From Lytechinus pictus (Eukaryota), in assembly GCF_037042905.1 (NCBI RefSeq), contig NC_087248.1, forward strand, positions 21,886,001 through 21,950,000: a DNA stretch of 64,000 nt. The letters are read 5' to 3'. This document shows positions 27,801-45,529 of the stretch, in pieces. Below the pieces are notes generated by a model. That model had not been told where the DNA came from, did no database searches, and saw nothing but the letters and a program-made list of their open reading frames with translations. Made by a program: the position numbers and the translations under genes. The stretch's first letter is position 1. Each line of letters begins with the position of its first letter.

Positions 27801-30565
27801 ATAGTATTTTATTATCATATGAATTGTATTTTTGTTAAACAACTTTTAATAGTTTGTTTTCAAAGTCAGCACTGTTGCTCTATTGAATGGCGTATTGCAG
27901 GCGAGACTGCCAGAGGCGCTCCACATGTTATGCTTATTTAGCTTATATTCTTTTGCCTTTGTAAGTCAGTGTAAAGTGTTTATTTTGTCACTTCCCTTGT
28001 TTTTATACAGGCTTTTTATTCAAGAAGGTTTCTGATACTGCATCTAAGACAGCTAACATGATCCAGAAGACAGTTGAAGAACAGGTACCTATGCTAACTC
28101 AAACTTTAAGATTAATGAAATGGGCCTATATGATAACGTGGAACTAAACATTTTTTTTTGTGTGTGTGTTTTTAAATCAGGGGCCAGCTCTCCACCAGTT
28201 CGGCTTCTTGTTGGTCCCTGAATTTTGATTTTTATTTCATTTTCAGTTTACTGGAGTCTGCTTAATATGCATATTTTCATTATTTTGTTGACTGAGAAAA
28301 ATAAAAAATGAGAAGGGAATAACATTAAGCTTGAATACTTGAAAGAATGATTAACTGCAAACCTAACCTTGTCAGGTTTCTCTTATACATACAGTGTATT
28401 ATTTGGTTTCCCCTTTCTTGGCAGCGTCAAGGTACTCTCTAAATGCTTTTGTTAGGAATCAATAGGGAACCTGAAGTTAGTATGCTGCCACTCTCTGAAG
28501 TTGAATTCTTGATTCTTCACATCTAGGGGTGATATCCTTGCCCAAATAATACTCTAGAGAAAACTTTTACTGGAAAGTACCTCAGGTGATGGTTCGTGTA
28601 GGCTCCACTACACTTCACTACTGCTACACCCACCCGAACGTATAGCGATAGTGAAGTGTAGTAGAGCCTACACGAACCATCACCTGAGGTAACTGGAAAG
28701 GAATTTGCATGTGTATTTGGAAAGAAATTCCCCATCTAAATTTCCATTTTATACCATTATTTATTTTCGTGCAATGTTTCAGAAAGTTGGCACCAAGTGT
28801 ACAAAATAAACAATATTTGATAATTTTCAAAAGGAAACAGGAACCCAAAAGAGGTCCATGATAGTTGACAAAAGTGAACGGATTTTGATCACATTTTTTA
28901 TTTCAATTTGAATTTTGTCATGTTTCAACAGACGATAGTAGGAGAGTTTACAAGGGAACAGCAGAAGTTTGTAAAGGAGAAGCATTCTAAGAGATCGGAG
29001 GCAGCTGTACCTCCATGGGTTGGGTACAATGAAGAAGAGCAGATGAAAGAACAGATCCTTGCTTTATCACAGGTATGTACATGTAGGAACCTATGTTAAA
29101 GGGGTTGGAAATGTAGGTCAGTCAGCACAAGTAACGCCACCGGGATCTGCAAGCGCAATACGTTATCTCGAATTTGGTTCGGGGCTTTGTTTCACAAAAG
29201 TTTTTATTATAGTAACTTTGCCATTCAATGGTAACTTCCCTGAAAGTCTTGATTCTGATTGGCTGATGAGCATCGTTACCATGGTTGTTACCATTGGATT
29301 GCGAAGTTACTATAATAAAAACTTCTGTGTAATGGGGCCCAGATGAGGGATGAACTACAAGGACTAGATTGTAAAGATTTGTTGTTCTCACTTATTAAAA
29401 AAAGGATTCCAGGCCATTATTTCAAAAGTATGGTATACAAATATACCAGGCTGTGAGTAGGTATAGCAGGTATTTGTCCGAGGTTGGACTGGCATTAGTA
29501 TTTTTCCTGAGGGACGAAGACCCCGAGGGAAAAGTAGTTATTTTTTCAATAAGTTAGAACAATGTCAGATCTTGATAATCTAGTTCTTGTATACGTTCAT
29601 CTTTTTCTAATCTGTAATTATCTGTTCATTTTTTTTTACCTGAACCAAAATATAGATAACGCGCTGCACTGACTAACTTACTTTTCCTGAAGCTACACGT
29701 GCAGCGGATTTGTGCCTGCGCCGAGAGATTGCGCGATGAATAACGACGTCAATGATGGAATAGTGCCTATTCCATCATTGACGTCACGGAATAGTAATTT
29801 TTCTTCGGTGGCGTTTTCATTTTCAACATCATCCCAAAATAGTGAGAATATGTTTGGTTGCATGATGCTATTAAAACCAATCAGCATACATGATTTAATT
29901 TACGTAGGATATAAAGATAATTATTCATCCTCGGTTGTACTGTCAATATTACAAATAGTAATTGCCAGTCCAACCTCGAAAAAAAAATTCCTGCTAACTT
30001 CCTCAAAGCCTGGTATATATATTATTTTGATCGTAAATTGTGAATTCACCAGTAGGTGTATAGTTCAAAGTTAACTATAAATATTAAAAATCTGTGTGCA
30101 CTCGAGGGGCTTATATGGTAATATGTGTTAAGTTTTATTAACTATTTTTCTATAAAAAGCCACCAATACCACACTTGATCATCTAGAAGGCTAATATGGA
30201 CTAGCAGTCAAACAAGAATATCATCTCAGTGAATTTCCTGGCCTCAACTATATATATATAATATATATATATGCGTAAATAAATCAAGCATTAACGCTAG
30301 ACGTAGCTTCCAAGTATCTCTTTTATTGCGAGCTTTCGGCCAGTGGGGCCTTCATCAGGCCTATAATGCATTGAAACAAACAAAATAGAACAAAACCATA
30401 CAAATAAAATAACAAAGTAAATAATGTGTAACAAAGGGTACAGAACAGAAGGATTACACTAAGATAACAAAATATAACACGTTGTGCAAAGGGCCCTCTT
30501 CCTTTATAATATATATATATATATATATATAACTAAGTACAATGCATTACCACTTTGCCTCATTA

Positions 30566-33600: not shown

Positions 33601-36600
33601 TGGCATTTGTAAATTTGAATTTTATGTGTTTTTTTAGGAATAAACATTGAAGATGTAACTTCTGAAGGTTTCCATGGCGAAGAAGAGTGCAGTGTGTTTC
33701 ATGGAACACCATAATCTTTTGTAGGCATACATGTATGTTGGTCCTGAAAAGGACCACTTAAACTCAACGTTTTGACAAGTGTGTGATAATGGAGACTGGA
33801 GTGCCAACTGGCAAAAGAAATCATTCAGTCAGTTTTCATTTCTAGGGAAGCACACGTAATAAGTCGAAGTAAACCTCTAGAAACAGTGCTGTATTAATTC
33901 ATCTGATGATATTATAATTATTATCATATTATGTATTTTCATCTTTCAGACAAGACTCCTCCTATTGATGTGAAGGGCGCCCCCAGTGCTCCTGCCAAAC
34001 CCACCAAGTCCGAAGAAGATCAGCTGGATATGGAAACGCCCGACAGTCCGCCAGGGTCAGAGTTCATCAGCGATGCTTTCAACTCTGAATTGGATGAAGA
34101 TGATCTGATGAAGGGCATGGAACAGCTTGGAATGGACAAAAAAGGTCTGTACATTGTACCCTTCCCTCTACCCCCACCCCCCAAAAAAAAAAAAAAAGCG
34201 AGAGAAAACAAAAAGAAAATTTGATTTTGATTAGGCTTGAGTCATCTTTATCATCTCACTGTTTATTTTGAAAAACGTTTATCTGCTTTTTGTAAACGGA
34301 TGGTTGTGGTTAACTGAGGGGGGGTGGCTTCTCCCAAAGTTGCTTAAATCGCACATCGCCACATCCCCAAAATGCCCATCTGTTTTCCATATCATTGAGA
34401 GTATTTTTATTTAGTTGGAAACTACCAGAAAAATGAGGAATACATGTATTTCATTCTCTTTGTCTTGATTCAAGAAGATTGATTGATTTATGGAAATTTC
34501 AGTTGATCGTTGACTTCTAACATTGTATATGGGTCTTGATTGAGACAAGGTCTCATTATGGCAATGTCAACCAAAATTTGTATCAACTATCTTCATACTT
34601 ACAAAAATATGTGTTGATAATACACAAATAAATTCCAGTTGTGGGAATGATCTCAAAATGACTTTTTACAGAATTTAATATAATGATCACCAAAGTGTCT
34701 GTTTGTATGAATAAAAAATATGTGCCAAAGGATTCTGGAAGAAATTGTGTAATTGCTGAGAAATAAGCAAAATAAGCGCGGATTCGGTCACTTCCGTCGG
34801 GTCTTTATTCCAGCAATAATAATACACTGTCCCACGTGTGCCTATCTGCGTTGGCGATCTTCAGTGTGATCGTTTTTTAGCTAGATATTGTGATTTCACA
34901 AAGTTCAGTTTATGTAACTGTACCAGATCTAGATCCACGATGATATATCAGTACTTTACCTTGGTTTTACAGACTTTCTCACGAAATCAGTGTTTTACTG
35001 CAACTACGTTCATTTAGCTTTAAACTTTAACTTTTGAAGGTTTCTGTGGCGAAGGAGAATAGTGTAGTAGGTTTCACGGTACACCATGCATCTTTCATGG
35101 CAATTGATGGTCCTGAAAAGGACCAGCCAGACTCTAGTTTGGGTGGTCCTTTTCAGGACCAACAATTGCCCACGAAAGAGACATGTAATAATAATACCGA
35201 TAATAACCTAGTCTGATATAGCGTTTTTCATGAAATCTATATCAAAGCGCTTAACAATGTAGAACATTTGAAATATACAAACAAAAGTGAATTAGAAATT
35301 ATATAACAAAAAATTAAAAATATTGGAGCAAATGTAATTGGGCTGTGTTGAATATGAACATGGTGTATCGTGAAACCTAACTACACAACACTTTACATAT
35401 AAGAATTTGAACTATTTTCAAACAATATCAATTATTTTGCTAGTTACATTGATTTGTCATGTAACTTTCTCTATTTTTAATTCATTCTAACCTCAGGTGA
35501 AGAGGGAGGAGAAGAAGAAGTTCCGGAATGGGAAAAAGAACTTCAGCAAGAGCTTCAGGTAAATTGATGTTAAAATTATGAACACTGAGGGATATCGTTA
35601 ACACTTTACTGCCCTCCTTTGACAAAATGAAGAAAGTAACATTAAAAATTTCCTATAAAAGAATAAAATGTATCTGTCATTTATGTAGACACCAATACAT
35701 GAGCATGATTGTTGACTAATCATATTTTATTAAAAACAGTGCTTTTGTATGAACTTTGTCTTAGAAGAAGAAATAAATTTGTGTAATGTAAACACATAAA
35801 AAAACTCATTTGGGGGTGAAATGTTACATCCATTTGTCAAAGAGGGCAGTATTGCACAAGATGATCTACATGTAAGCGATGTTGTTGGACTACTGATTAG
35901 AGTAGTCTGGCTGGAAACCAGGCGCAGATTCAGGACCCTTTTTTTTGGTGGGGGGCCTTGTCAAATATTTGGAACAAAACGTGCCCCCTCAGAAAAATCT
36001 TGGAGTCACGCCTGGAAACAGTAGAAATTGTTGCACAAGGTTAGTGGTGTAGTTCAAAGCAGTCACAGTAACAGACATAGATAATAATTTAGGTGACATA
36101 AGCCTTTTGGCAGAGCCTCAGTTTGTTTCCAGTGGCTGAAACAAAACTAGCTGGGAATAAAGAGAGAAAATGAGAGACTGTGTGATCAAGAAACTTCAGT
36201 GATCAGGCCTTTTGTTTCCTGTTTAAGATGCATTAAATGAATTATTAATGAGTATGCAAAAAAAACCAGCTTTGACCAATCCACACTGTCGATGCTAATA
36301 TGCATAGTGTGAGTAACTATGTGGATGGGTGTGGGTGTTATACATACATATATAATCTTGCTCTATGTGCCAGTGATACAAGCATAATGGTGATTTCAAT
36401 TTCGGTGTTGGAAGCACAATTTTGATTGTGTTTCATGGCTCCAAAACCTATTCTAAGTTTACACAAATCATAATATTGACAGCTCAACACCTAGTGAGTG
36501 ACTTTTCAGCACCATCTTTAATTCTTAATTTTATGTTTGGTGTTATACTCATGTAAAAATTGACCTGACACCAACACCATAAGGTCAACTTTAAATTGAA

Positions 36601-42600: not shown

Positions 42601-45529
42601 TTTTTTCATATATTTTGTTTCTTTTTTATTGATTAACCCCTTAGGATTATTATTATTTTCTTTTTGGATTAATGAATTTTCAGAATAAGAAATATTCTGA
42701 ATAATGCCACAAATGTTCGGATTAATGAACACTTAATCATCTTGGTATTAAAATGCAATTTGTCTGTTTTGGAATAACCAACCTTTGGAATAACAAACAT
42801 TAGGTGGTTTCAAACCGCCTCGATCACAAGAATCCCCGTTAAATTACGAGAACATTTTTAGGCTAAAAAATACCCATTAATTATTCCTGCATTCAGACTG
42901 CCCCGAAACATACACTTCGGGATAAATTCCTGAAGTTAGGAGCATGCGCAGTATGGTCTAATAAGCAGGCAAGGCGCGAAATTCAAAACTACTAGCCCAG
43001 CAGCCACCCACGGCGCCGCACCCAACGACACGCTGGGCTAAAAGTTTCCGTAATTTGCTTTCACATCGGAAAAATCCCTGCGACCTTGGAAAAATCCCTG
43101 CGAAAGTTCTCGTAATTTCACCAAGTACCTACTATTTAGCGGGTATTTTCTTTCGGGGAAATTGCGCGTAGTTTGCTTTCACATTACCAAAATACCTGGT
43201 TAGTGGTATTTTCTGATCGGGGTAAATTTCCCGTTCAGAGAATACCTGGAACTGACGAACTTCGAGGCGGTCTGAAACCACCTATTGTCTGTATGTAGAG
43301 TGCATGGAATCAACCGTACTTGAAGAACTTGTCATGTTATGATTAATAAGTGGTGGAATAAGTGGAATCTTGAAATGCACTTGTCTTTTTGGCATGTTTC
43401 TCATGTTGCTCCAGTGAGACAAAAACCCCTCTTCTGAAAAGAAAAGAGGTAAACTGCTTTCTCATCTTCATCATCACGAAGAAGAGAAGAAGAAAAAGGG
43501 GAATGAAATCACAACCGAGGATCATCAATCAACATTTGTCGTTTGACAAGTTGTCGCATCCGACAAGTTTTGTTGATTTTGATTGGCTGAGAAGCATTGT
43601 TACTGTGGTAACTGTCGGATAACACAGATTTTGTTGGATAAAACGTCCTTCAAGTCCTTTCATGAAACTCTCCCCCGTTGACTTTTGACTTATTATTAAA
43701 TTATATTGGAGTTTCACCCCTCTCTTTCTCATTCTCTCTTTTTCTTTACCCCTCTCAGTACTCCACCATGCAGACACTTAATTCAATGTCTTAAACAGAA
43801 GCTTATCAAAAGCTTGTTTCAATTTCATTGAGTATTTGGACTCTGGCCAGTTTGGATGAAACAACAGGAAAACAATTTTATCTGGCGTTTCCTCTTCTGA
43901 AATGGGGAGAGTGGATCTACATGTAGTTTCCTTCAAAAGAATTCCATTTATCCATCAATACTTAGCTCTGAGATGTCCAGTGTTACAATACACAAACATA
44001 GTGCATGGAGAAATAGTTCCATGCTTTATACCACTAATATTAAATATATGTAGCAGCAAATCCTTATTATTTCCTTAATGCTTACAAAACTTGTGACCCC
44101 TAACTACTGTATAATAAGGCAGTAAACCCTCAAAACAAAACTCAAAATTAAAATGATTTATATTCACCACATTGGCTGAACCCATTTGGTCTTCTATCAA
44201 TTTAGGCTCATTGCTGTTTGATCTACACTACATGTACACTTGGTCTAATACTCATTTAGTCTAATGTCCAGTTGGTCTAATTTCACTTTGTCTACTTGTA
44301 ATTTTTTGTCCTGCAGTCACATTTCCCCTATGGCAGCTGTGCGGCGAGTTGAAAAAAGCTAATTTATTCAAACCACCTATATGTAGCTCATACAAAAAAC
44401 GTTAAAGCGACTATTTTCCAATTGCCGTACAGCTGCCGTACGGGAAATGTGACTGCGCCATTGCTTTGTCAAAATAAAAAGTTCATCTTACCATTATATA
44501 GACAAAGTGGTGTTTGACCAAGTAGATATGAGATGGAATGTGCATAGCCAAATTGGAAATTAGACAAAATGGTAAATTGGCTGCATGGCAATTAGACAAA
44601 ATGGATAGAGGAAGAACTGGATTTGATGAGGTACATGTATGATTACACCACGTGGGATGATGCCAAAAGAAAAGGGGACTGATTAGGAATTTAGTAACTT
44701 CTGAAGGTTTCCATGGTGAAGAAGAAAAAGTGTAGTAGGTTTCACGGTCGTGGTACACCATGTATCTTTCTTGGGCAAATGTTGGTTCTGAAAAGGACAA
44801 CCCAAACTCGACCTTTCGACAAGTGTGTTCTTGTCATCTTCAGGAGAATGAGCAAAGTTTGTAAAAGCAGGCTGTATGTACTCTGTCAAGGTGTCGTATT
44901 TACGGTACCTTGCAGGGTACATGTCTTTGATTGGCTGGATAAGTCACCTGACATCCACATGTGGACGTGAGTGACAGCATACAAAATTAGGAATTTACCC
45001 TGAAAACCTTTTTAAAGAATGGATTATAAGTGGATGGCTCTTAATTTGAACAATGCAATAAACCATCTCGAAGTGATAATGAAAGGCGTCCTGTTATCCA
45101 CCAGGAATTGGAGTTTGCTGATAACCATTGGAATCAGTAAAGTGATAAGAGATTTGATTCATTTTGTCAAAAGGTCACATGTGCTGCACACAGATAATAT
45201 GTTCATGTATGTGACTACACCAATATTGCCGTTTGAAGAGTTTCAGCCATCGTTTGACTGTGAGGACATTGGACTGCAATTTCGTTTTAAATTATGTTCT
45301 TCTTAAATATCATGAGAAGAATTTGATGGTTCACAGTGATTATTTCTATCCTTACCGTAACTTAAGTCTATAGATCTTTGAGAGTCCTTTTGTGATCTTT
45401 TATGACCTTTGAACTGTCTCCTTTTGTCTTCCGTCGCAGGATTATGAGGTCGTCGGGGAGGAGCAGAACGAGGAATGGGAGAGAGAGATCAATCAGATGC
45501 TGGAGGATGAAGTGGACAAACAATCGTAA
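24899..45529 (+). CDS. SYAP1: Synapse-associated protein 1 (BSD domain; Sap47 family), 418 aa, 9 exons
   Basis: Exons 24899-25286, 28011-28084, 28932-29072, 31364-31503, 32166-32257, 33428-33502, 33950-34144, 35497-35558, 45440-45529; GT-AG with consistent phases (1257 nt). Motifs [64 protein letters not shown] (BSD), [22 protein letters not shown]. Confidence 0.95.
25734..26550. mobile_element. Foldback element with ~385-bp arms, MULE-like (9-bp TSD)
   Basis: Near-perfect inverted arms centred about 26140, termini tacct...aggta, TSD atgcctgac / atgcatgac. Confidence 0.88.
26594..27132. mobile_element. MITE family A, copy 3
   Basis: Colinear with 7323-7912, with small internal deletions. 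TTAA on both sides. Confidence 0.88.
27270..27929 (+). mobile_element. Interspersed element with ~150-160-bp tandem units (Helentron-associated/HINE-like), 5' part missing
   Basis: Four units starting gtcacatgaccaaggtcaaaggtca (about 27288, 27450, 27613, 27760), ending caggcgagact...ccacatgtt. A similar end lies near 39650-39685. Confidence 0.6.
28578..28691. mobile_element. 114-bp miniature of the MULE-like foldback family
   Basis: tacctcaggtgatggttcgtgtaggctc...gagcctacacgaaccatcacctgaggta with perfect 9-bp TSD ACTGGAAAG. Confidence 0.9.
29181..29340. mobile_element. Short Harbinger-like MITE
   Basis: Imperfect TIRs ggggctttgtttcacaaaagttttt / aaaacttctgtgtaatggggccc. A relative lies near 20165-20326. 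Confidence 0.55.
29441..30018. mobile_element. Interspersed repeat with inverted ends; second partial copy at 32757-33265
   Basis: atataccaggctgtgag...ctcaaagcctggtatat. Long colinear similarity with 32757-33265 (for example gacgtcaatgatggaatagtgc). Confidence 0.7.
30273..30505 (-). mobile_element. Penelope-like pLTR fragment (family 1) inserted in a (TA)n tract
   Basis: Flanked on both sides by (TA)n. T-rich body, then hammerhead motif, then AATAAA on the minus strand. Confidence 0.75.
30323..30366 (-). ncRNA. Minimal type I hammerhead ribozyme motif (family 1)
   Basis: Minus strand: uuauagGC CUGAUGA a GGCC ccacu GGCC GAAA GCUC^ GCaauaa. Conserved core boxes, 4-bp stem II, palindromic AGCU in place of stem III. 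Confidence 0.78.
30606..31170. mobile_element. Tc1/mariner-like MITE
   Basis: Right end reads TA|cagttgaggctaaaagtttacatacacc on the minus strand (Tc1-type TIR). Left end ttgaggccaggaaattca abuts (TA)n. Another related end at 30228-30250. Confidence 0.65.
33634..33786 (-). mobile_element. Penelope-like pLTR fragment (family 2), truncated inside the hammerhead
   Basis: Colinear with 44683-44828. Retains cuuguc aAAACGUU gag (3' half of the ribozyme, GAAA mutated). Confidence 0.7.
34626..35019. mobile_element. Probable TTAA-target MITE, left end decayed
   Basis: Ends gcaactacgttcatttagct|TTAA, with an imperfect inverted match aaataaattccagttg at left. Confidence 0.4.
35028..35185. mobile_element. 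Penelope-like pLTR family 2, head-to-head inverted pair
   Basis: 35028-35134 matches the family on the minus strand. 35135-35185 is the same sequence on the plus strand. Junction at 35134/35135. Confidence 0.75.
35919..36014. mobile_element. Small CAG...CTG MITE with apparent 5-bp TSD
   Basis: caggcg...cgcctg flanked by GAAAC on both sides. Confidence 0.6.
37188..37432 (+). promoter_or_regulatory. Cluster of co-oriented CCAAT boxes plus GC box in SYAP1 intron 8
   Basis: CCAAT at 37188, 37216, 37230, 37260, 37318, 37394 (TCAAT at 37287) and gaggcggag at about 37424. Confidence 0.4.
38526..39124. mobile_element. Harbinger-like element with TAA TSD inserted in an older repeat
   Basis: Imperfect TIRs gcccagttgacacctgcacgcattgtgg / ccacaatgtgtgcaagtgtccaccgagc with TAA on both flanks. 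The uninterrupted host sequence cacTAAtagctccaagcc is at 31563-31580. Confidence 0.78.
40606..41004. mobile_element. MITE related to 404-818
   Basis: TIRs aggccaccgc..acaccttgcgacccgactggtctgc / gcagaccagttgggtcgtaaggtgtgcggtggcct. Confidence 0.78.
42802..43283. mobile_element. MITE with 3-bp TSD (Harbinger-like)
   Basis: TIR aggtggtttcaaaccgcctcga / tcgaggcggtctgaaaccacct with ATT on both flanks. Confidence 0.85.
44313..44456. mobile_element. Short MITE nested in a decayed palindromic repeat
   Basis: gcagtcacatttcccctatggcagctgtgcggc / gccgtacagctgccgtacgggaaatgtgactgc. Confidence 0.7.
44683..44985 (-). mobile_element. Penelope-like pLTR (family 2), longest copy; right boundary approximate
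   Basis: Shares aacttctgaaggtttccatgg...ctgaaaaggac with the 33634 and 35028 copies. Contains a complete hammerhead fold and an upstream CCAATCA on the minus strand. Confidence 0.7.
44807..44846 (-). ncRNA. Minimal type I hammerhead ribozyme motif (family 2), one substitution next to the core
   Basis: Minus strand: CUC CUGAAGA u GACAAG aacaca CUUGUC GAAA gGUC^ GAG. 6-bp stem II and 3-bp stem I. The sister copy has C at the substituted position (AAACGUU). Confidence 0.75.

What the first reader, a model, noticed from the sequence alone, without database searches (positions are those of the whole stretch)
35028..35185. Head-to-head retroelement inversion whose junction sits exactly at the predicted hammerhead cleavage site
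Seen: in the 44807-44846 copy the ribozyme reads GAAA.GUC^GAGUUUGGG. At 35134/35135 the left arm (minus strand) begins GAGTCTGGCTGGTCCTTTTCAGGACC and the right arm (plus strand) begins TAGTTTGGGTGGTCCTTTTCAGGACC. Both arms therefore start at the first base after the cleavage triplet, and neither carries any catalytic core. Established: Penelope-like elements carry minimal type I hammerheads in their pLTRs and often show inverted pLTR segments. Inference: this is a genomic fossil of in vivo self-cleavage, where the RT template's 5' end was set by the ribozyme and synthesis folded back or switched template at that end. That would be indirect evidence that a minimal hammerhead with almost no stem III really cleaves.
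Basis: partly seen in the sequence, partly recalled or inferred. Interest (0 to 1): 0.75.

Follow-up and report, generated by a model that had tools for sequence, protein, structure and literature searches.

The report
Retroelement inversion joined at ribozyme cut site
Two short mirror-image copies of a Penelope-like jumping gene meet where its hammerhead ribozyme should cut, and about one copy in ten genome-wide starts at that same base, which is genomic evidence that this minimal ribozyme cuts its RNA in the animal.

Summary
Window 35028-35134 (minus strand) and 35135-35185, continuing at 35359-35388 (plus strand), are inverted arms of one pseudo-LTR (pLTR) family. They meet at 35134/35135, the first base after the predicted hammerhead cut, give or take one base (the right arm reads T where G is expected). 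Neither arm holds any ribozyme core.

The family is the pLTR of a young 2.8-kb Penelope-like element encoding a reverse transcriptase and a GIY-YIG endonuclease, in what earlier scan notes call a sea-urchin genome.

- Of about 60 independent 5' ends between -19 and +9, 26 to 32 lie exactly at +1.
- Only 6 or 7 lie anywhere upstream.
- A control stretch (+34 to +60) has about 0.6 ends per position per 100 copies, against 13 at +1.
- Young head-to-head loci and simple +1-truncated copies carry 5-13-bp target-site duplications, so each is one insertion event.

Head-to-head pairs almost always join one arm with the 30-40-bp "tail" to one arm without it.

Best reading: ribozyme-cleaved RNA templated reverse transcription primed on both target strands, and the two run-off cDNAs were then joined.

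RNA-seq showed no pile-up of ends at the site. The element type is known; this genomic evidence for in vivo cleavage was not in the papers I could read.

The parts
35028..35134 (-). Long arm. This is the pLTR segment from +1 (at 35134) to about +109 (at 35028), and it includes the 30-40-bp 'tail'. It has no ribozyme core.
   Evidence: BLAST to the reference copy, alignment and unit coordinates +6..+109 in L038.
35134..35135 (.). Head-to-head junction, reading CTC|TAG on the plus strand. The two template 5' ends meet here, at the predicted hammerhead cleavage site to within one base.
   Evidence: The same junction type occurs at C5:30504545. Junctions CTC-T-GAG and CTC-AA-GAG occur at other loci.
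35135..35185 (+). Short arm, first part (+1/+2 to about +47).
35186..35358 (+). Later insertion of an unrelated 171-bp dispersed repeat that splits the short arm. CATG/ACATG is duplicated at its ends.
   Evidence: 145 candidate copies, and most matches span bases 1-171 of the query. Alignment.
35359..35388 (+). Short arm, second part (about +48 to +76). It ends at the tail-less reverse-transcription start site.
   Evidence: (repeat I2).
35109..35160 (.). The two copies of the conserved hairpin GGUCCUUUUCAGGACC (+11..+26), one in each arm (about 35109-35124 and 35145-35160). I used this hairpin as the anchor for the census.
44693..44985 (-). Reference solo pLTR copy (293 bp), flanked by the 11-bp target-site duplication ATTAGGAATTT at 44682-44692 and 44986-44996.
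44810..44850 (-). Minimal type I hammerhead of the reference copy: stem I 5' strand, CUGAAGA, stem II, GAAA, then GG-UC. The cut is predicted between 44810 and 44809. Its helix-III loop is GG here, not the palindromic CG of the young copies.
   Evidence: For the young copy, parse and fold.
33634..33784 (-). Third, old copy of the family. Homology runs from about -20 to +113, and the 5' half of the ribozyme is lost or diverged.

Best explanation
The feature is one old retrotransposition event of a Penelope-like element (PLE).

Shown:
- The pLTR carries a minimal type I hammerhead.
- Genomic copies have two discrete classes of 5' end. One is a broad cluster at -42..-38, about 30 nt downstream of a TATA box and at the first base of stem I. 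The other is a one-base peak at +1, the base after GUC.
- 3' ends fall at +77-79 or at +109-117.

Inferred:
- pLTR RNA was cut by its hammerhead in vivo. When reverse transcription starts at one of the two internal start sites only 78-115 nt downstream, it runs off at the ribozyme-made 5' end and leaves a short dead-end insert.
- In the head-to-head cases both nicked target strands primed cDNA synthesis, as the anole PLE enzyme does in vitro. One primed at the tail-bearing start site and one at the tail-less site, on two cleaved RNA molecules.
- The two run-off cDNAs were then joined by host end-joining, with 0-2 (rarely 9) filler bases or a loss of a few bases.

Roughly one copy in ten that holds the +9..+25 anchor starts at +1. 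So cleavage of the template is common but not the rule.
For: Element identity:
- Tandem arrays of period 2808/2826 bp at 99-100% identity.
- An 807-aa ORF with RVT_1 (E 1e-11) and GIY-YIG (23.5 bits, motif GVY..CxCG..YIGETG).
- Hammerhead parse and fold with stem II of 7 bp and stem I of 4+2 bp.

Census of 5' ends:
- Unbiased first 100 of 596 anchor hits: 13 arms start at +1, 8 at +3..+8, 1 within -19..-1.
- Copies lacking the ribozyme base at -20: of about 60 independent ends, 26 are at +1 and 6 are at +1/+2 with T or A replacing the G. There are 7 at +5 and 6 at +4, and 6-7 ends in total upstream.
- P about 5e-22.
- With non-C at -1, about 51 true +1 starts were found. About 24 have an unrelated flank and about 25 have an inverted arm.
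- Control stretch +34..+60: about 16 ends over 28 positions per 100 copies.
- Upstream stretch: ends cluster at -42..-38.

Single-event origin:
- Target-site duplications of 5-10 bp flank the whole head-to-head structure in L036, L045, L048, L039, L042 and L046.
- Duplications of 5-13 bp abut +1 in 8 of 20 simple copies. One of these was also seen in RNA reads (loose ends at 914 and 1027).
- Eight or more loci have both arms at +1, give or take one base, with different fillers and different flanks.
- C2:70357532-614 has three segment starts, all at +1.

Arm asymmetry: 9 of 12 symmetric loci, and 7 further loci, pair one arm ending at +70-80 with one ending at +109-117, and never two alike.

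Literature:
- The anole PLE protein cuts and extends both strands and starts reverse transcription at two internal sites that bound the 'tail'. Its hammerhead needs the protein to cleave (PMC11167929).
- An inverted 5'-truncated copy and a tail at one end only are known PLE traits (PMC8557442).
Against: - No direct RNA evidence. In three ribo-depleted runs and one cDNA RNA-seq run the tool listed no pile-up of molecule ends at +1. Coverage there is dominated by fragments embedded in host transcripts.
- Not every junction near the ribozyme is at +1. The large C10 head-to-head array joins -10 to ORF position 725. Others lie at -3/-4, -8 and about -20.
- The tallies were classified by hand from the first 100 rows of each pattern search. 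They cover only copies with an exact 17-base anchor.
- The window copy itself is old (arms about 10% apart). Its first right-arm base is T, and its own target-site duplication is not clean (AAACTT versus AACACTT).
- Only one copy shows filler between GUC and GAG (C12:27854059). A targeted search found none.
- The two-primer step is inferred from anatomy and from an in vitro study of a lizard element, not shown here.
Confidence: 0.75

Rival explanations
1. Reverse transcriptase stops at +1 on uncleaved RNA because the folded ribozyme, or protein bound to it, blocks it. The truncated cDNA is then integrated.
For: The anole study found uncleaved RNA to be the dominant substrate and found no RNA-seq ends at the cut site (PMC11167929). 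Here too no RNA ends piled up at +1. Some ends lie a few bases inside the arm, at +3..+8.
Against: The 3' strand of stem I covers +1..+6. A structural block would therefore stop synthesis at or before +7, not after copying stem I fully. The peak is one base wide and sits on the chemically defined cleavage bond. About 70% of copies read straight through the ribozyme, and ends at -1..-19 are nearly absent, so there is no general pausing zone.
Confidence: 0.1
2. +1 is a second transcription start site, so the arms are full-length copies of a shorter transcript and the ribozyme plays no part.
For: The C|G step fits the pyrimidine-purine rule for start sites. pLTRs hold promoters (PMC6765202).
Against: The only TATA box (TATATAAGG at -71..-63) predicts a start near -41. 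A broad cluster of 5' ends is indeed found there, at -42..-38. The +1 peak is a single base, unlike that cluster, and coincides exactly with the ribozyme's cleavage bond. A second PLE family with a different sequence also has its commonest non-continuing end at its own predicted cut.
Confidence: 0.06
3. The template was cleaved, but the inversion arose from one cDNA that snapped back on itself or switched template, not from priming on both target strands.
For: Asymmetric junctions such as +1/+5, +2/+5 and +3/+5 could be snap-back products with a small loop. Direct template jumps do occur (C2:70357532 joins +31 to +1).
Against: Junctions symmetric to +1 on both sides with only T or AA between them (C16:15115072, C21:15378952, C10:11256585, C2:70357563) leave no loop for a hairpin primer. 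The second arm ends at a recurrent start site, +77-79, not at arbitrary points.
Confidence: 0.2
4. Two independent insertions landed back to back, or a later DNA rearrangement made the palindrome. On this reading the position of the junction is chance.
For: The window copy is old, and its own target-site duplication is unclear.
Against: One target-site duplication flanks the whole structure in six young loci. The junction recurs at 12 or more loci. The two window arms share derived bases.
Confidence: 0.02

Closest known systems
Complex insertions of canonical EN+ Penelope-like elements (Evgen'ev and Arkhipova 2005; Craig et al. 2021, PMC8557442)
   Same: RT plus C-terminal GIY-YIG. pLTRs formed by partial tandems. 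An inverted 5'-truncated copy lies next to the 5' end. A 30-40-bp tail sits at one end only. A minimal hammerhead lies in the pLTR.
   Different: Those descriptions give variable 5' truncation points and call the hammerhead's role unclear. Here a large class of copies and inversion junctions ends at one base, the cleavage site. In the papers I could read this was not reported.
PAc, the anole Poseidon PLE studied in vitro (Frangieh et al. 2024, PMC11167929)
   Same: Two internal start sites of reverse transcription that bound the tail. Both target strands are cut and extended. The target is AT-rich.
   Different: In PAc the cut lies 26 nt inside the ORF, cleavage was dispensable in vitro, and no RNA ends were seen at the site. 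Here the cut lies 89 nt before the likely ATG, and genomic copies record frequent use of cleaved templates. PAc showed no strand preference between the two start sites. Here head-to-head pairs always combine one of each.
R2 retrotransposon with its HDV-like ribozyme (Eickbush and Eickbush 2010; recalled from memory, cited in PMC4209133)
   Same: A self-cleaving ribozyme sets the 5' end of the RNA template, and this shows in the genomic 5' junctions.
   Different: R2 uses another ribozyme class, inserts at one site, and needs the cleavage to free itself from the rRNA co-transcript. Here cleavage near the start site of reverse transcription mostly yields dead-end fragments.
L1 twin priming inversions (Ostertag and Kazazian 2001; recalled from memory)
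   Same: An inverted 5' segment inside a single target-site duplication, explained by priming from both nicked strands.
   Different: In L1 the second primer anneals at an arbitrary internal position of the same RNA. Here both arms begin at defined start sites and both run to the RNA's 5' end.
Non-LTR retrozymes of animals (Cervera and de la Pena 2020, PMC7229834; Li et al. 2026 preprint, 10.64898/2026.07.22.740005)
   Same: Short non-coding hammerhead-linked repeats thought to derive from PLE pLTRs and to be mobilised by PLEs.
   Different: Retrozymes are tandem units that contain the ribozyme and circularise. These fragments lack the ribozyme, are single or head-to-head, and showed no circular joints in the reads.

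Membership tests
Penelope-like element, canonical EN+ type | Reverse transcriptase domain | tested here: met
   RVT_1, E 1.2e-11, residues 344-534 of the unaltered ORF L032:1003-3423.
Penelope-like element, canonical EN+ type | C-terminal GIY-YIG endonuclease | tested here: met
   PF01541 at 23.5 bits against a cut-off of 22.6. Motif GVY..CxCG..YIGETG at residues 700-716.
Penelope-like element, canonical EN+ type | pLTRs formed by tandem or partial-tandem copies | tested here: met
   C10:11884421-11903818 holds arrays of period 2808/2826 bp. Partial tandems occur in L002-L030.
Penelope-like element, canonical EN+ type | Inverted 5'-truncated copy at the 5' end, and a 30-40-bp tail at one end only | tested here: met
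   One arm ends at +70-80 and the other at +109-117.
Penelope-like element, canonical EN+ type | RT groups with PLE/TERT-like RTs in a phylogeny, with clade assignment | not tested
   No tree was built. The big protein searches were not used.
Minimal type I hammerhead of PLEs (Cervera and de la Pena 2014) | Core boxes CUGANGA and GAAA, and a cleavage triplet NUH | tested here: met
   The young unit reads CUGAGGA, one extra C, stem II, GAAA, CG, then UC^G. The window reference copy reads CUGAAGA ... GAAA GG UC^G.
Minimal type I hammerhead of PLEs (Cervera and de la Pena 2014) | Stem II, and an open stem I of about 6 bp | tested here: met
   The MFE fold of -41..+10 gives stem II of 7 bp and stem I of 4+2 bp.
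Minimal type I hammerhead of PLEs (Cervera and de la Pena 2014) | Helix III of 1-2 bp capped by a small palindromic loop, which allows a dimer | tested here: met
   A-CG-U in the young unit, where ACGU is self-complementary. The old window reference copy has GG instead, so it does not meet this feature.
Minimal type I hammerhead of PLEs (Cervera and de la Pena 2014) | Match to a curated hammerhead covariance model | tested here: not met
   No Rfam hammerhead family matched at the gathering score in the window, nor at E up to 10 on L032:800-1000. I take this as expected for a motif with almost no helix III, on the recalled assumption, not tested here, that those models include that helix.
Minimal type I hammerhead of PLEs (Cervera and de la Pena 2014) | Self-cleavage after H17 | tested here: inconclusive
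   Only indirect support: a genomic 5'-end peak at +1. RNA reads show no pile-up of ends.
L1-type twin priming | The second primer anneals internally on the same RNA, so the inversion point is arbitrary | tested here: not met
   Both arms run to the RNA 5' end and begin at fixed start sites.
Non-LTR retrozyme | Tandem units of 170-400 nt that contain the ribozyme and are expressed as circles | tested here: not met
   The arms lack the ribozyme. Only opposite-strand joints were listed in the RNA reads.

The most novel reading that the evidence does not exclude
The head-to-head insertion may be the footprint of the dimeric ribozyme itself. Two pLTR RNAs pair through the palindromic helix-III loop inside a dimeric PLE protein complex and are cut together. 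Their two 3' fragments stay in that complex. Each is then copied from one of the two nicked target strands, one from the tail-bearing start site and one from the tail-less site. If so, the genome holds a quantitative record of in vivo hammerhead activity: about 10% of templates cut in this family, against about 2% in a family with a C4 core variant.
Probability: 0.25. Interest if true: 0.8.

Novelty: new member of a known kind. Interest (0 to 1): 0.62.

Why it matters
Minimal hammerheads are very numerous in animal genomes (over 6,000 type I motifs in one coral, PMC7229834), and those in PLE pLTRs have had no shown activity in vivo.
- Cervera and de la Pena (2014) wrote of an "absence of in vivo evidence".
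- Craig et al. (2021) called the function "still unclear".
- Frangieh et al. (2024) found no RNA ends at the site and found cleavage dispensable in vitro.

A one-base peak of retrocopy 5' ends at the cleavage bond, backed by target-site duplications, is indirect but population-scale evidence that the ribozyme cuts in the germ line.

It also suggests that cutting in the 3' pLTR is costly for the element, because it makes dead-end 78-115-nt inserts. It gives a cheap genomic assay that can be repeated in any PLE-rich genome and compared across core variants. It supports in vivo the two start sites and the both-strand priming seen in vitro.

Tried and rejected
- **Rfam:** no hammerhead hit at the gathering score or at E up to 10. 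I judged this uninformative for minimal motifs.
- **RNA reads:** no pile-up of ends at +1. About 94% of reads run on into unlike sequence, so the coverage comes from fragments inside host transcripts. This neither supports nor refutes cleavage.
- **Filler search:** I looked for filler bases inserted exactly between GUC and GAG in otherwise continuous copies and found 0 hits. The single case at C12:27854059 stays an anecdote.
- **Second family as a replicate:** the hammerhead family at window 30273-30505 gave only 4 hits, too few.
- **C4-core family as a negative control:** it still shows +1 ends, though about five-fold fewer. Its start site of reverse transcription lies only about 22 nt from the cut, so it is not a clean control.
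- **A 12-locus class with the same T-rich flank before +1:** this proved to be one larger repeat that holds only +1..+46, so I counted it as one event.
- **An 11-locus inverted junction (-39 joined to -28):** this is an inherited composite, not independent events.
- **Limits on data:** Later stretches were fetched in small pieces. A natural copy (C10, L032/L033) served as the coordinate reference.
Full report
**1. What is in the window**

The plus strand at 35028-35134 and the stretch from 35135 onward are inverted copies of one repeat.
- Read as sense, the left arm (minus strand) begins GAGTCTGGCTGGTCC.
- The right arm begins TAGTTTGGGTGGTCC.
- Both align to a third copy, the solo insert at 44693-44985 (sense on the minus strand), from the base that follows GAAAGGTC.
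- That copy is flanked by the 11-bp target-site duplication ATTAGGAATTT.
- Its hammerhead reads CUGAAGA, stem II, GAAA, GG, UC, with the cut predicted between 44810 and 44809.
- Neither arm at 35134/35135 holds any core sequence.

- A 171-173-bp unit of an unrelated dispersed repeat sits at 35186-35358. The search returned 145 candidates, and most matches cover bases 1-171.
- The arm resumes at 35359 and ends near 35388, at about +76.
- The arms are about 90% alike and share derived bases, as expected if both came from one RNA source long ago.
- The right arm starts with T where G is expected, so the junction is exact to within one base.

**2. What the family is**

The whole assembly (811 Mb; earlier scan notes call it a sea urchin) holds over a thousand candidate copies.
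- On contig 10 there are tandem arrays of a 2808/2826-bp unit at 99-100% identity.
- One natural copy carries an open frame of 807 codons from an ATG in GCCATGG context at +90.
- This is a canonical endonuclease-bearing Penelope-like element, and the repeat is its pLTR.

In young copies the ribozyme reads CUGAGGA, one extra C, a 6-7-bp stem II, GAAA, then A-CG-U as a one-pair helix III with a palindromic loop, then C^GAG.
- Stem I is 4+2 bp.
- This is the minimal, dimer-type hammerhead described for PLEs (PMC4209133).
- Rfam models do not detect it.

I number positions from the cut. +1 is the G of GAG, and -1 is the C of GUC.

**3.

I used the conserved hairpin at +9..+25 as an exact anchor and listed the 28 bases upstream of it. 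All classification below was done by hand from the listed rows.

*First 100 of 596 hits, taken in contig order:*
- About 70 continue into the ribozyme.
- 13 arms start at +1.
- 8 start at +3..+8.
- One starts within -19..-1.

*Copies whose -20 base is not the ribozyme's A (176 hits, 100 listed).* After removing ribozyme-continuing rows, duplicates and one propagated composite, about 60 independent ends remained:

| Position | Ends |
|---|---|
| +1 | 26 |
| +1/+2, with T or A in place of the G (includes the window) | 6 |
| +2 | 1 |
| +3 | 2 |
| +4 | 6 |
| +5 | 7 |
| +6 | 1 |
| +8/9 | 4 |
| All upstream (-3/-4, -8, -10, about -20) | 6-7 |

- The chance of 26 of 60 falling on one of 28 positions is about 5e-22.
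- A search that required a non-C at -1 found 78 copies. About 27 are ribozyme-continuing with a C-to-T type change, and about 51 are true +1 starts.
- A control anchor showing +34..+60 gave about 16 ends spread over 28 positions per 100 copies.
- An anchor showing -53..-26 revealed a second, broad class of ends at -42..-38. This lies about 30 nt downstream of TATATAAGG and at the first base of stem I. I read it as the transcription start.

So copies end either where transcription probably starts or, on a single base, where the ribozyme should cut.

**4. These ends are insertion ends**

- Twelve loci carry the two hairpins head to head within 30 bases. None holds a core base beyond +1.
- Arms complete to +1 are separated by nothing, by T, or by AA. 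One search added a T case and a 9-base filler case.
- In six young loci one 5-10-bp target-site duplication flanks the whole structure.
- I fetched twenty simple +1-truncated copies. Eight have clear duplications of 5-13 bp that abut +1 with 0-3 extra bases. RNA reads showed the same duplication for one of them.
- One locus has three segment starts, all at +1 (C2:70357532-614).
- One copy starts at +1 and continues into the ORF (L056). Cleaved long RNA can therefore also be a template.

**5. Arm asymmetry**

- 3' ends fall at +73..+79 or at +108..+117.
- This matches the two internal start sites of reverse transcription and the 30-40-bp tail described for PLEs (PMC11167929; PMC8557442).
- In 9 of 12 symmetric loci, and in 7 further head-to-head loci, one arm has the tail and the other lacks it. 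There are never two alike. Rough P is 0.001 if the two arms were independent.
- The window copy follows the rule, with +109 on the left and about +76 on the right.

**6. Mechanism**

The best reading has three steps.
1. The hammerhead cuts pLTR RNA in vivo.
2. Reverse transcription starts 78-115 nt downstream and runs off at the new 5' end.
3. When both nicked target strands prime synthesis, as the anole enzyme does in vitro, two run-off cDNAs are joined head to head.

Junctions that are symmetric up to +1 leave no loop for a snap-back primer. The fixed end of the second arm argues against arbitrary template switching.

Three rivals remain less likely, for the reasons given under each: a stop of the enzyme at the folded ribozyme, a second start of transcription at +1, and a later DNA rearrangement.

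Weak points:
- There are no RNA ends at +1 in the reads.
- Classification was by hand and covered only exact-anchor copies.
- Some junctions lie nearby at -3/-4, -8 and -10, including the big array on contig 10.

**7. A second family**

A different PLE family has a C4 core variant (L049).
- It has 635 ribozyme-continuing copies and 27 others.
- 12-13 of those 27 start at its own +1. The position is ambiguous over -2..+1 because of TT.
- That is about 2% of copies, against about 10% here.
- An earlier scan note said that family shows no sign of cutting. My count qualifies that note.
- Because its geometry differs, it is not a clean control.

**8. Comparison and novelty**

The element, its minimal hammerhead, inverted 5'-truncated copies and the one-sided tail are all known. 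What I did not find in the papers I could read is that 5' ends and inversion junctions pile up on the cleavage bond. Those papers state that in vivo evidence is lacking or that the function is unclear. The closest parallel is R2, whose ribozyme sets the template's 5' end (recalled from memory).

I therefore file the object as a new member of a known kind. The inference it supports is of real interest to people working on ribozymes and retroelements.

A natural copy served as the coordinate frame.

Noticed in passing
window 35109-35124 and 35145-35182; L032:924-964: Right after the cut lies a hairpin, GGUCCUUUUCAGGACC plus AACA, followed at +37..+45 by CAAGAAAGA. Together they resemble a sea-urchin histone mRNA 3'-end signal of stem-loop plus spacer element (the spacer motif is recalled from memory). 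Rfam Histone3 scores 16.9 bits, E 0.037, below its gathering score of 34. Some segments end at about +31 (C2:70357532). Earlier scan notes on this genome saw the same resemblance.
   Followed up: partly
window 35186-35358: A full unit of a 171-bp dispersed repeat (145 candidate copies at 80-91% identity) was inserted into the short arm after the inversion formed. CATG/ACATG is duplicated at its ends.
   Followed up: yes
L032:872-876 (positions -42..-38 of the pLTR): A broad cluster of independent 5' ends (about 23 in 100 listed rows) lies about 30 nt downstream of TATATAAGG and at the first base of stem I. It is probably the transcription start, so the ribozyme would be the first 41 nt of the transcript. 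In run X24, 41 reads also begin matching at L032:873.
   Followed up: partly
C1:26695212, C1:38723086, C2:10434326, C3:15119948 and 7 more loci: An identical inverted junction, with one arm from about -39 and the other from -28 and a diagnostic GATATT in one arm, recurs at 11 or more loci. The inverted 5' piece has been inherited as part of a propagating copy. It was not formed anew each time.
   Followed up: partly
L070-L073 (C2:3517700, C3:19493750, C6:8195400, C2:18524250): A repeat of more than 1 kb (97-99% identical copies, 12 or more loci) holds only +1..+46 of the pLTR. It again starts exactly at +1, after a T-rich run.
   Followed up: partly
L049 (C4:13343450-13343800): The PLE family with a CCGACGA (C4) hammerhead core also has its commonest non-continuing 5' end at its own predicted cut. 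That is about 12-13 of 662 copies. Two copies carry 2- or 6-base fillers exactly at the cut (C1:41168179, C17:11299621).
   Followed up: partly
L056 (C3:49025982-49026202): This copy starts at +1 after an unrelated flank and continues past +135 into the ORF. A ribozyme-bearing pLTR lies about 2.2 kb further on. It is a long copy made from RNA cut at the upstream ribozyme.
   Followed up: no
window 44693-44985; L008, L009, L025: Solo pLTR copies with no ORF sequence upstream begin at the same base (unit position 1, about -178). This may be a third discrete 5' end, of unknown cause.
   Followed up: no
window 30273-30505: A separate 230-bp insert sits in a (TA)n tract. It has a canonical minimal hammerhead on the minus strand (CUGAUGA ... 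GAAA GC UC^GC). Only 4 genomic hits share its downstream anchor.
   Followed up: partly
C10:11884421-11903818 (L031-L034): Two opposed tandem arrays of the full element stand at 99-100% identity. They are joined head to head, with ORF position 725 against -10 and 3 bp of shared bases. The element was active very recently, or the array was amplified recently.
   Followed up: yes
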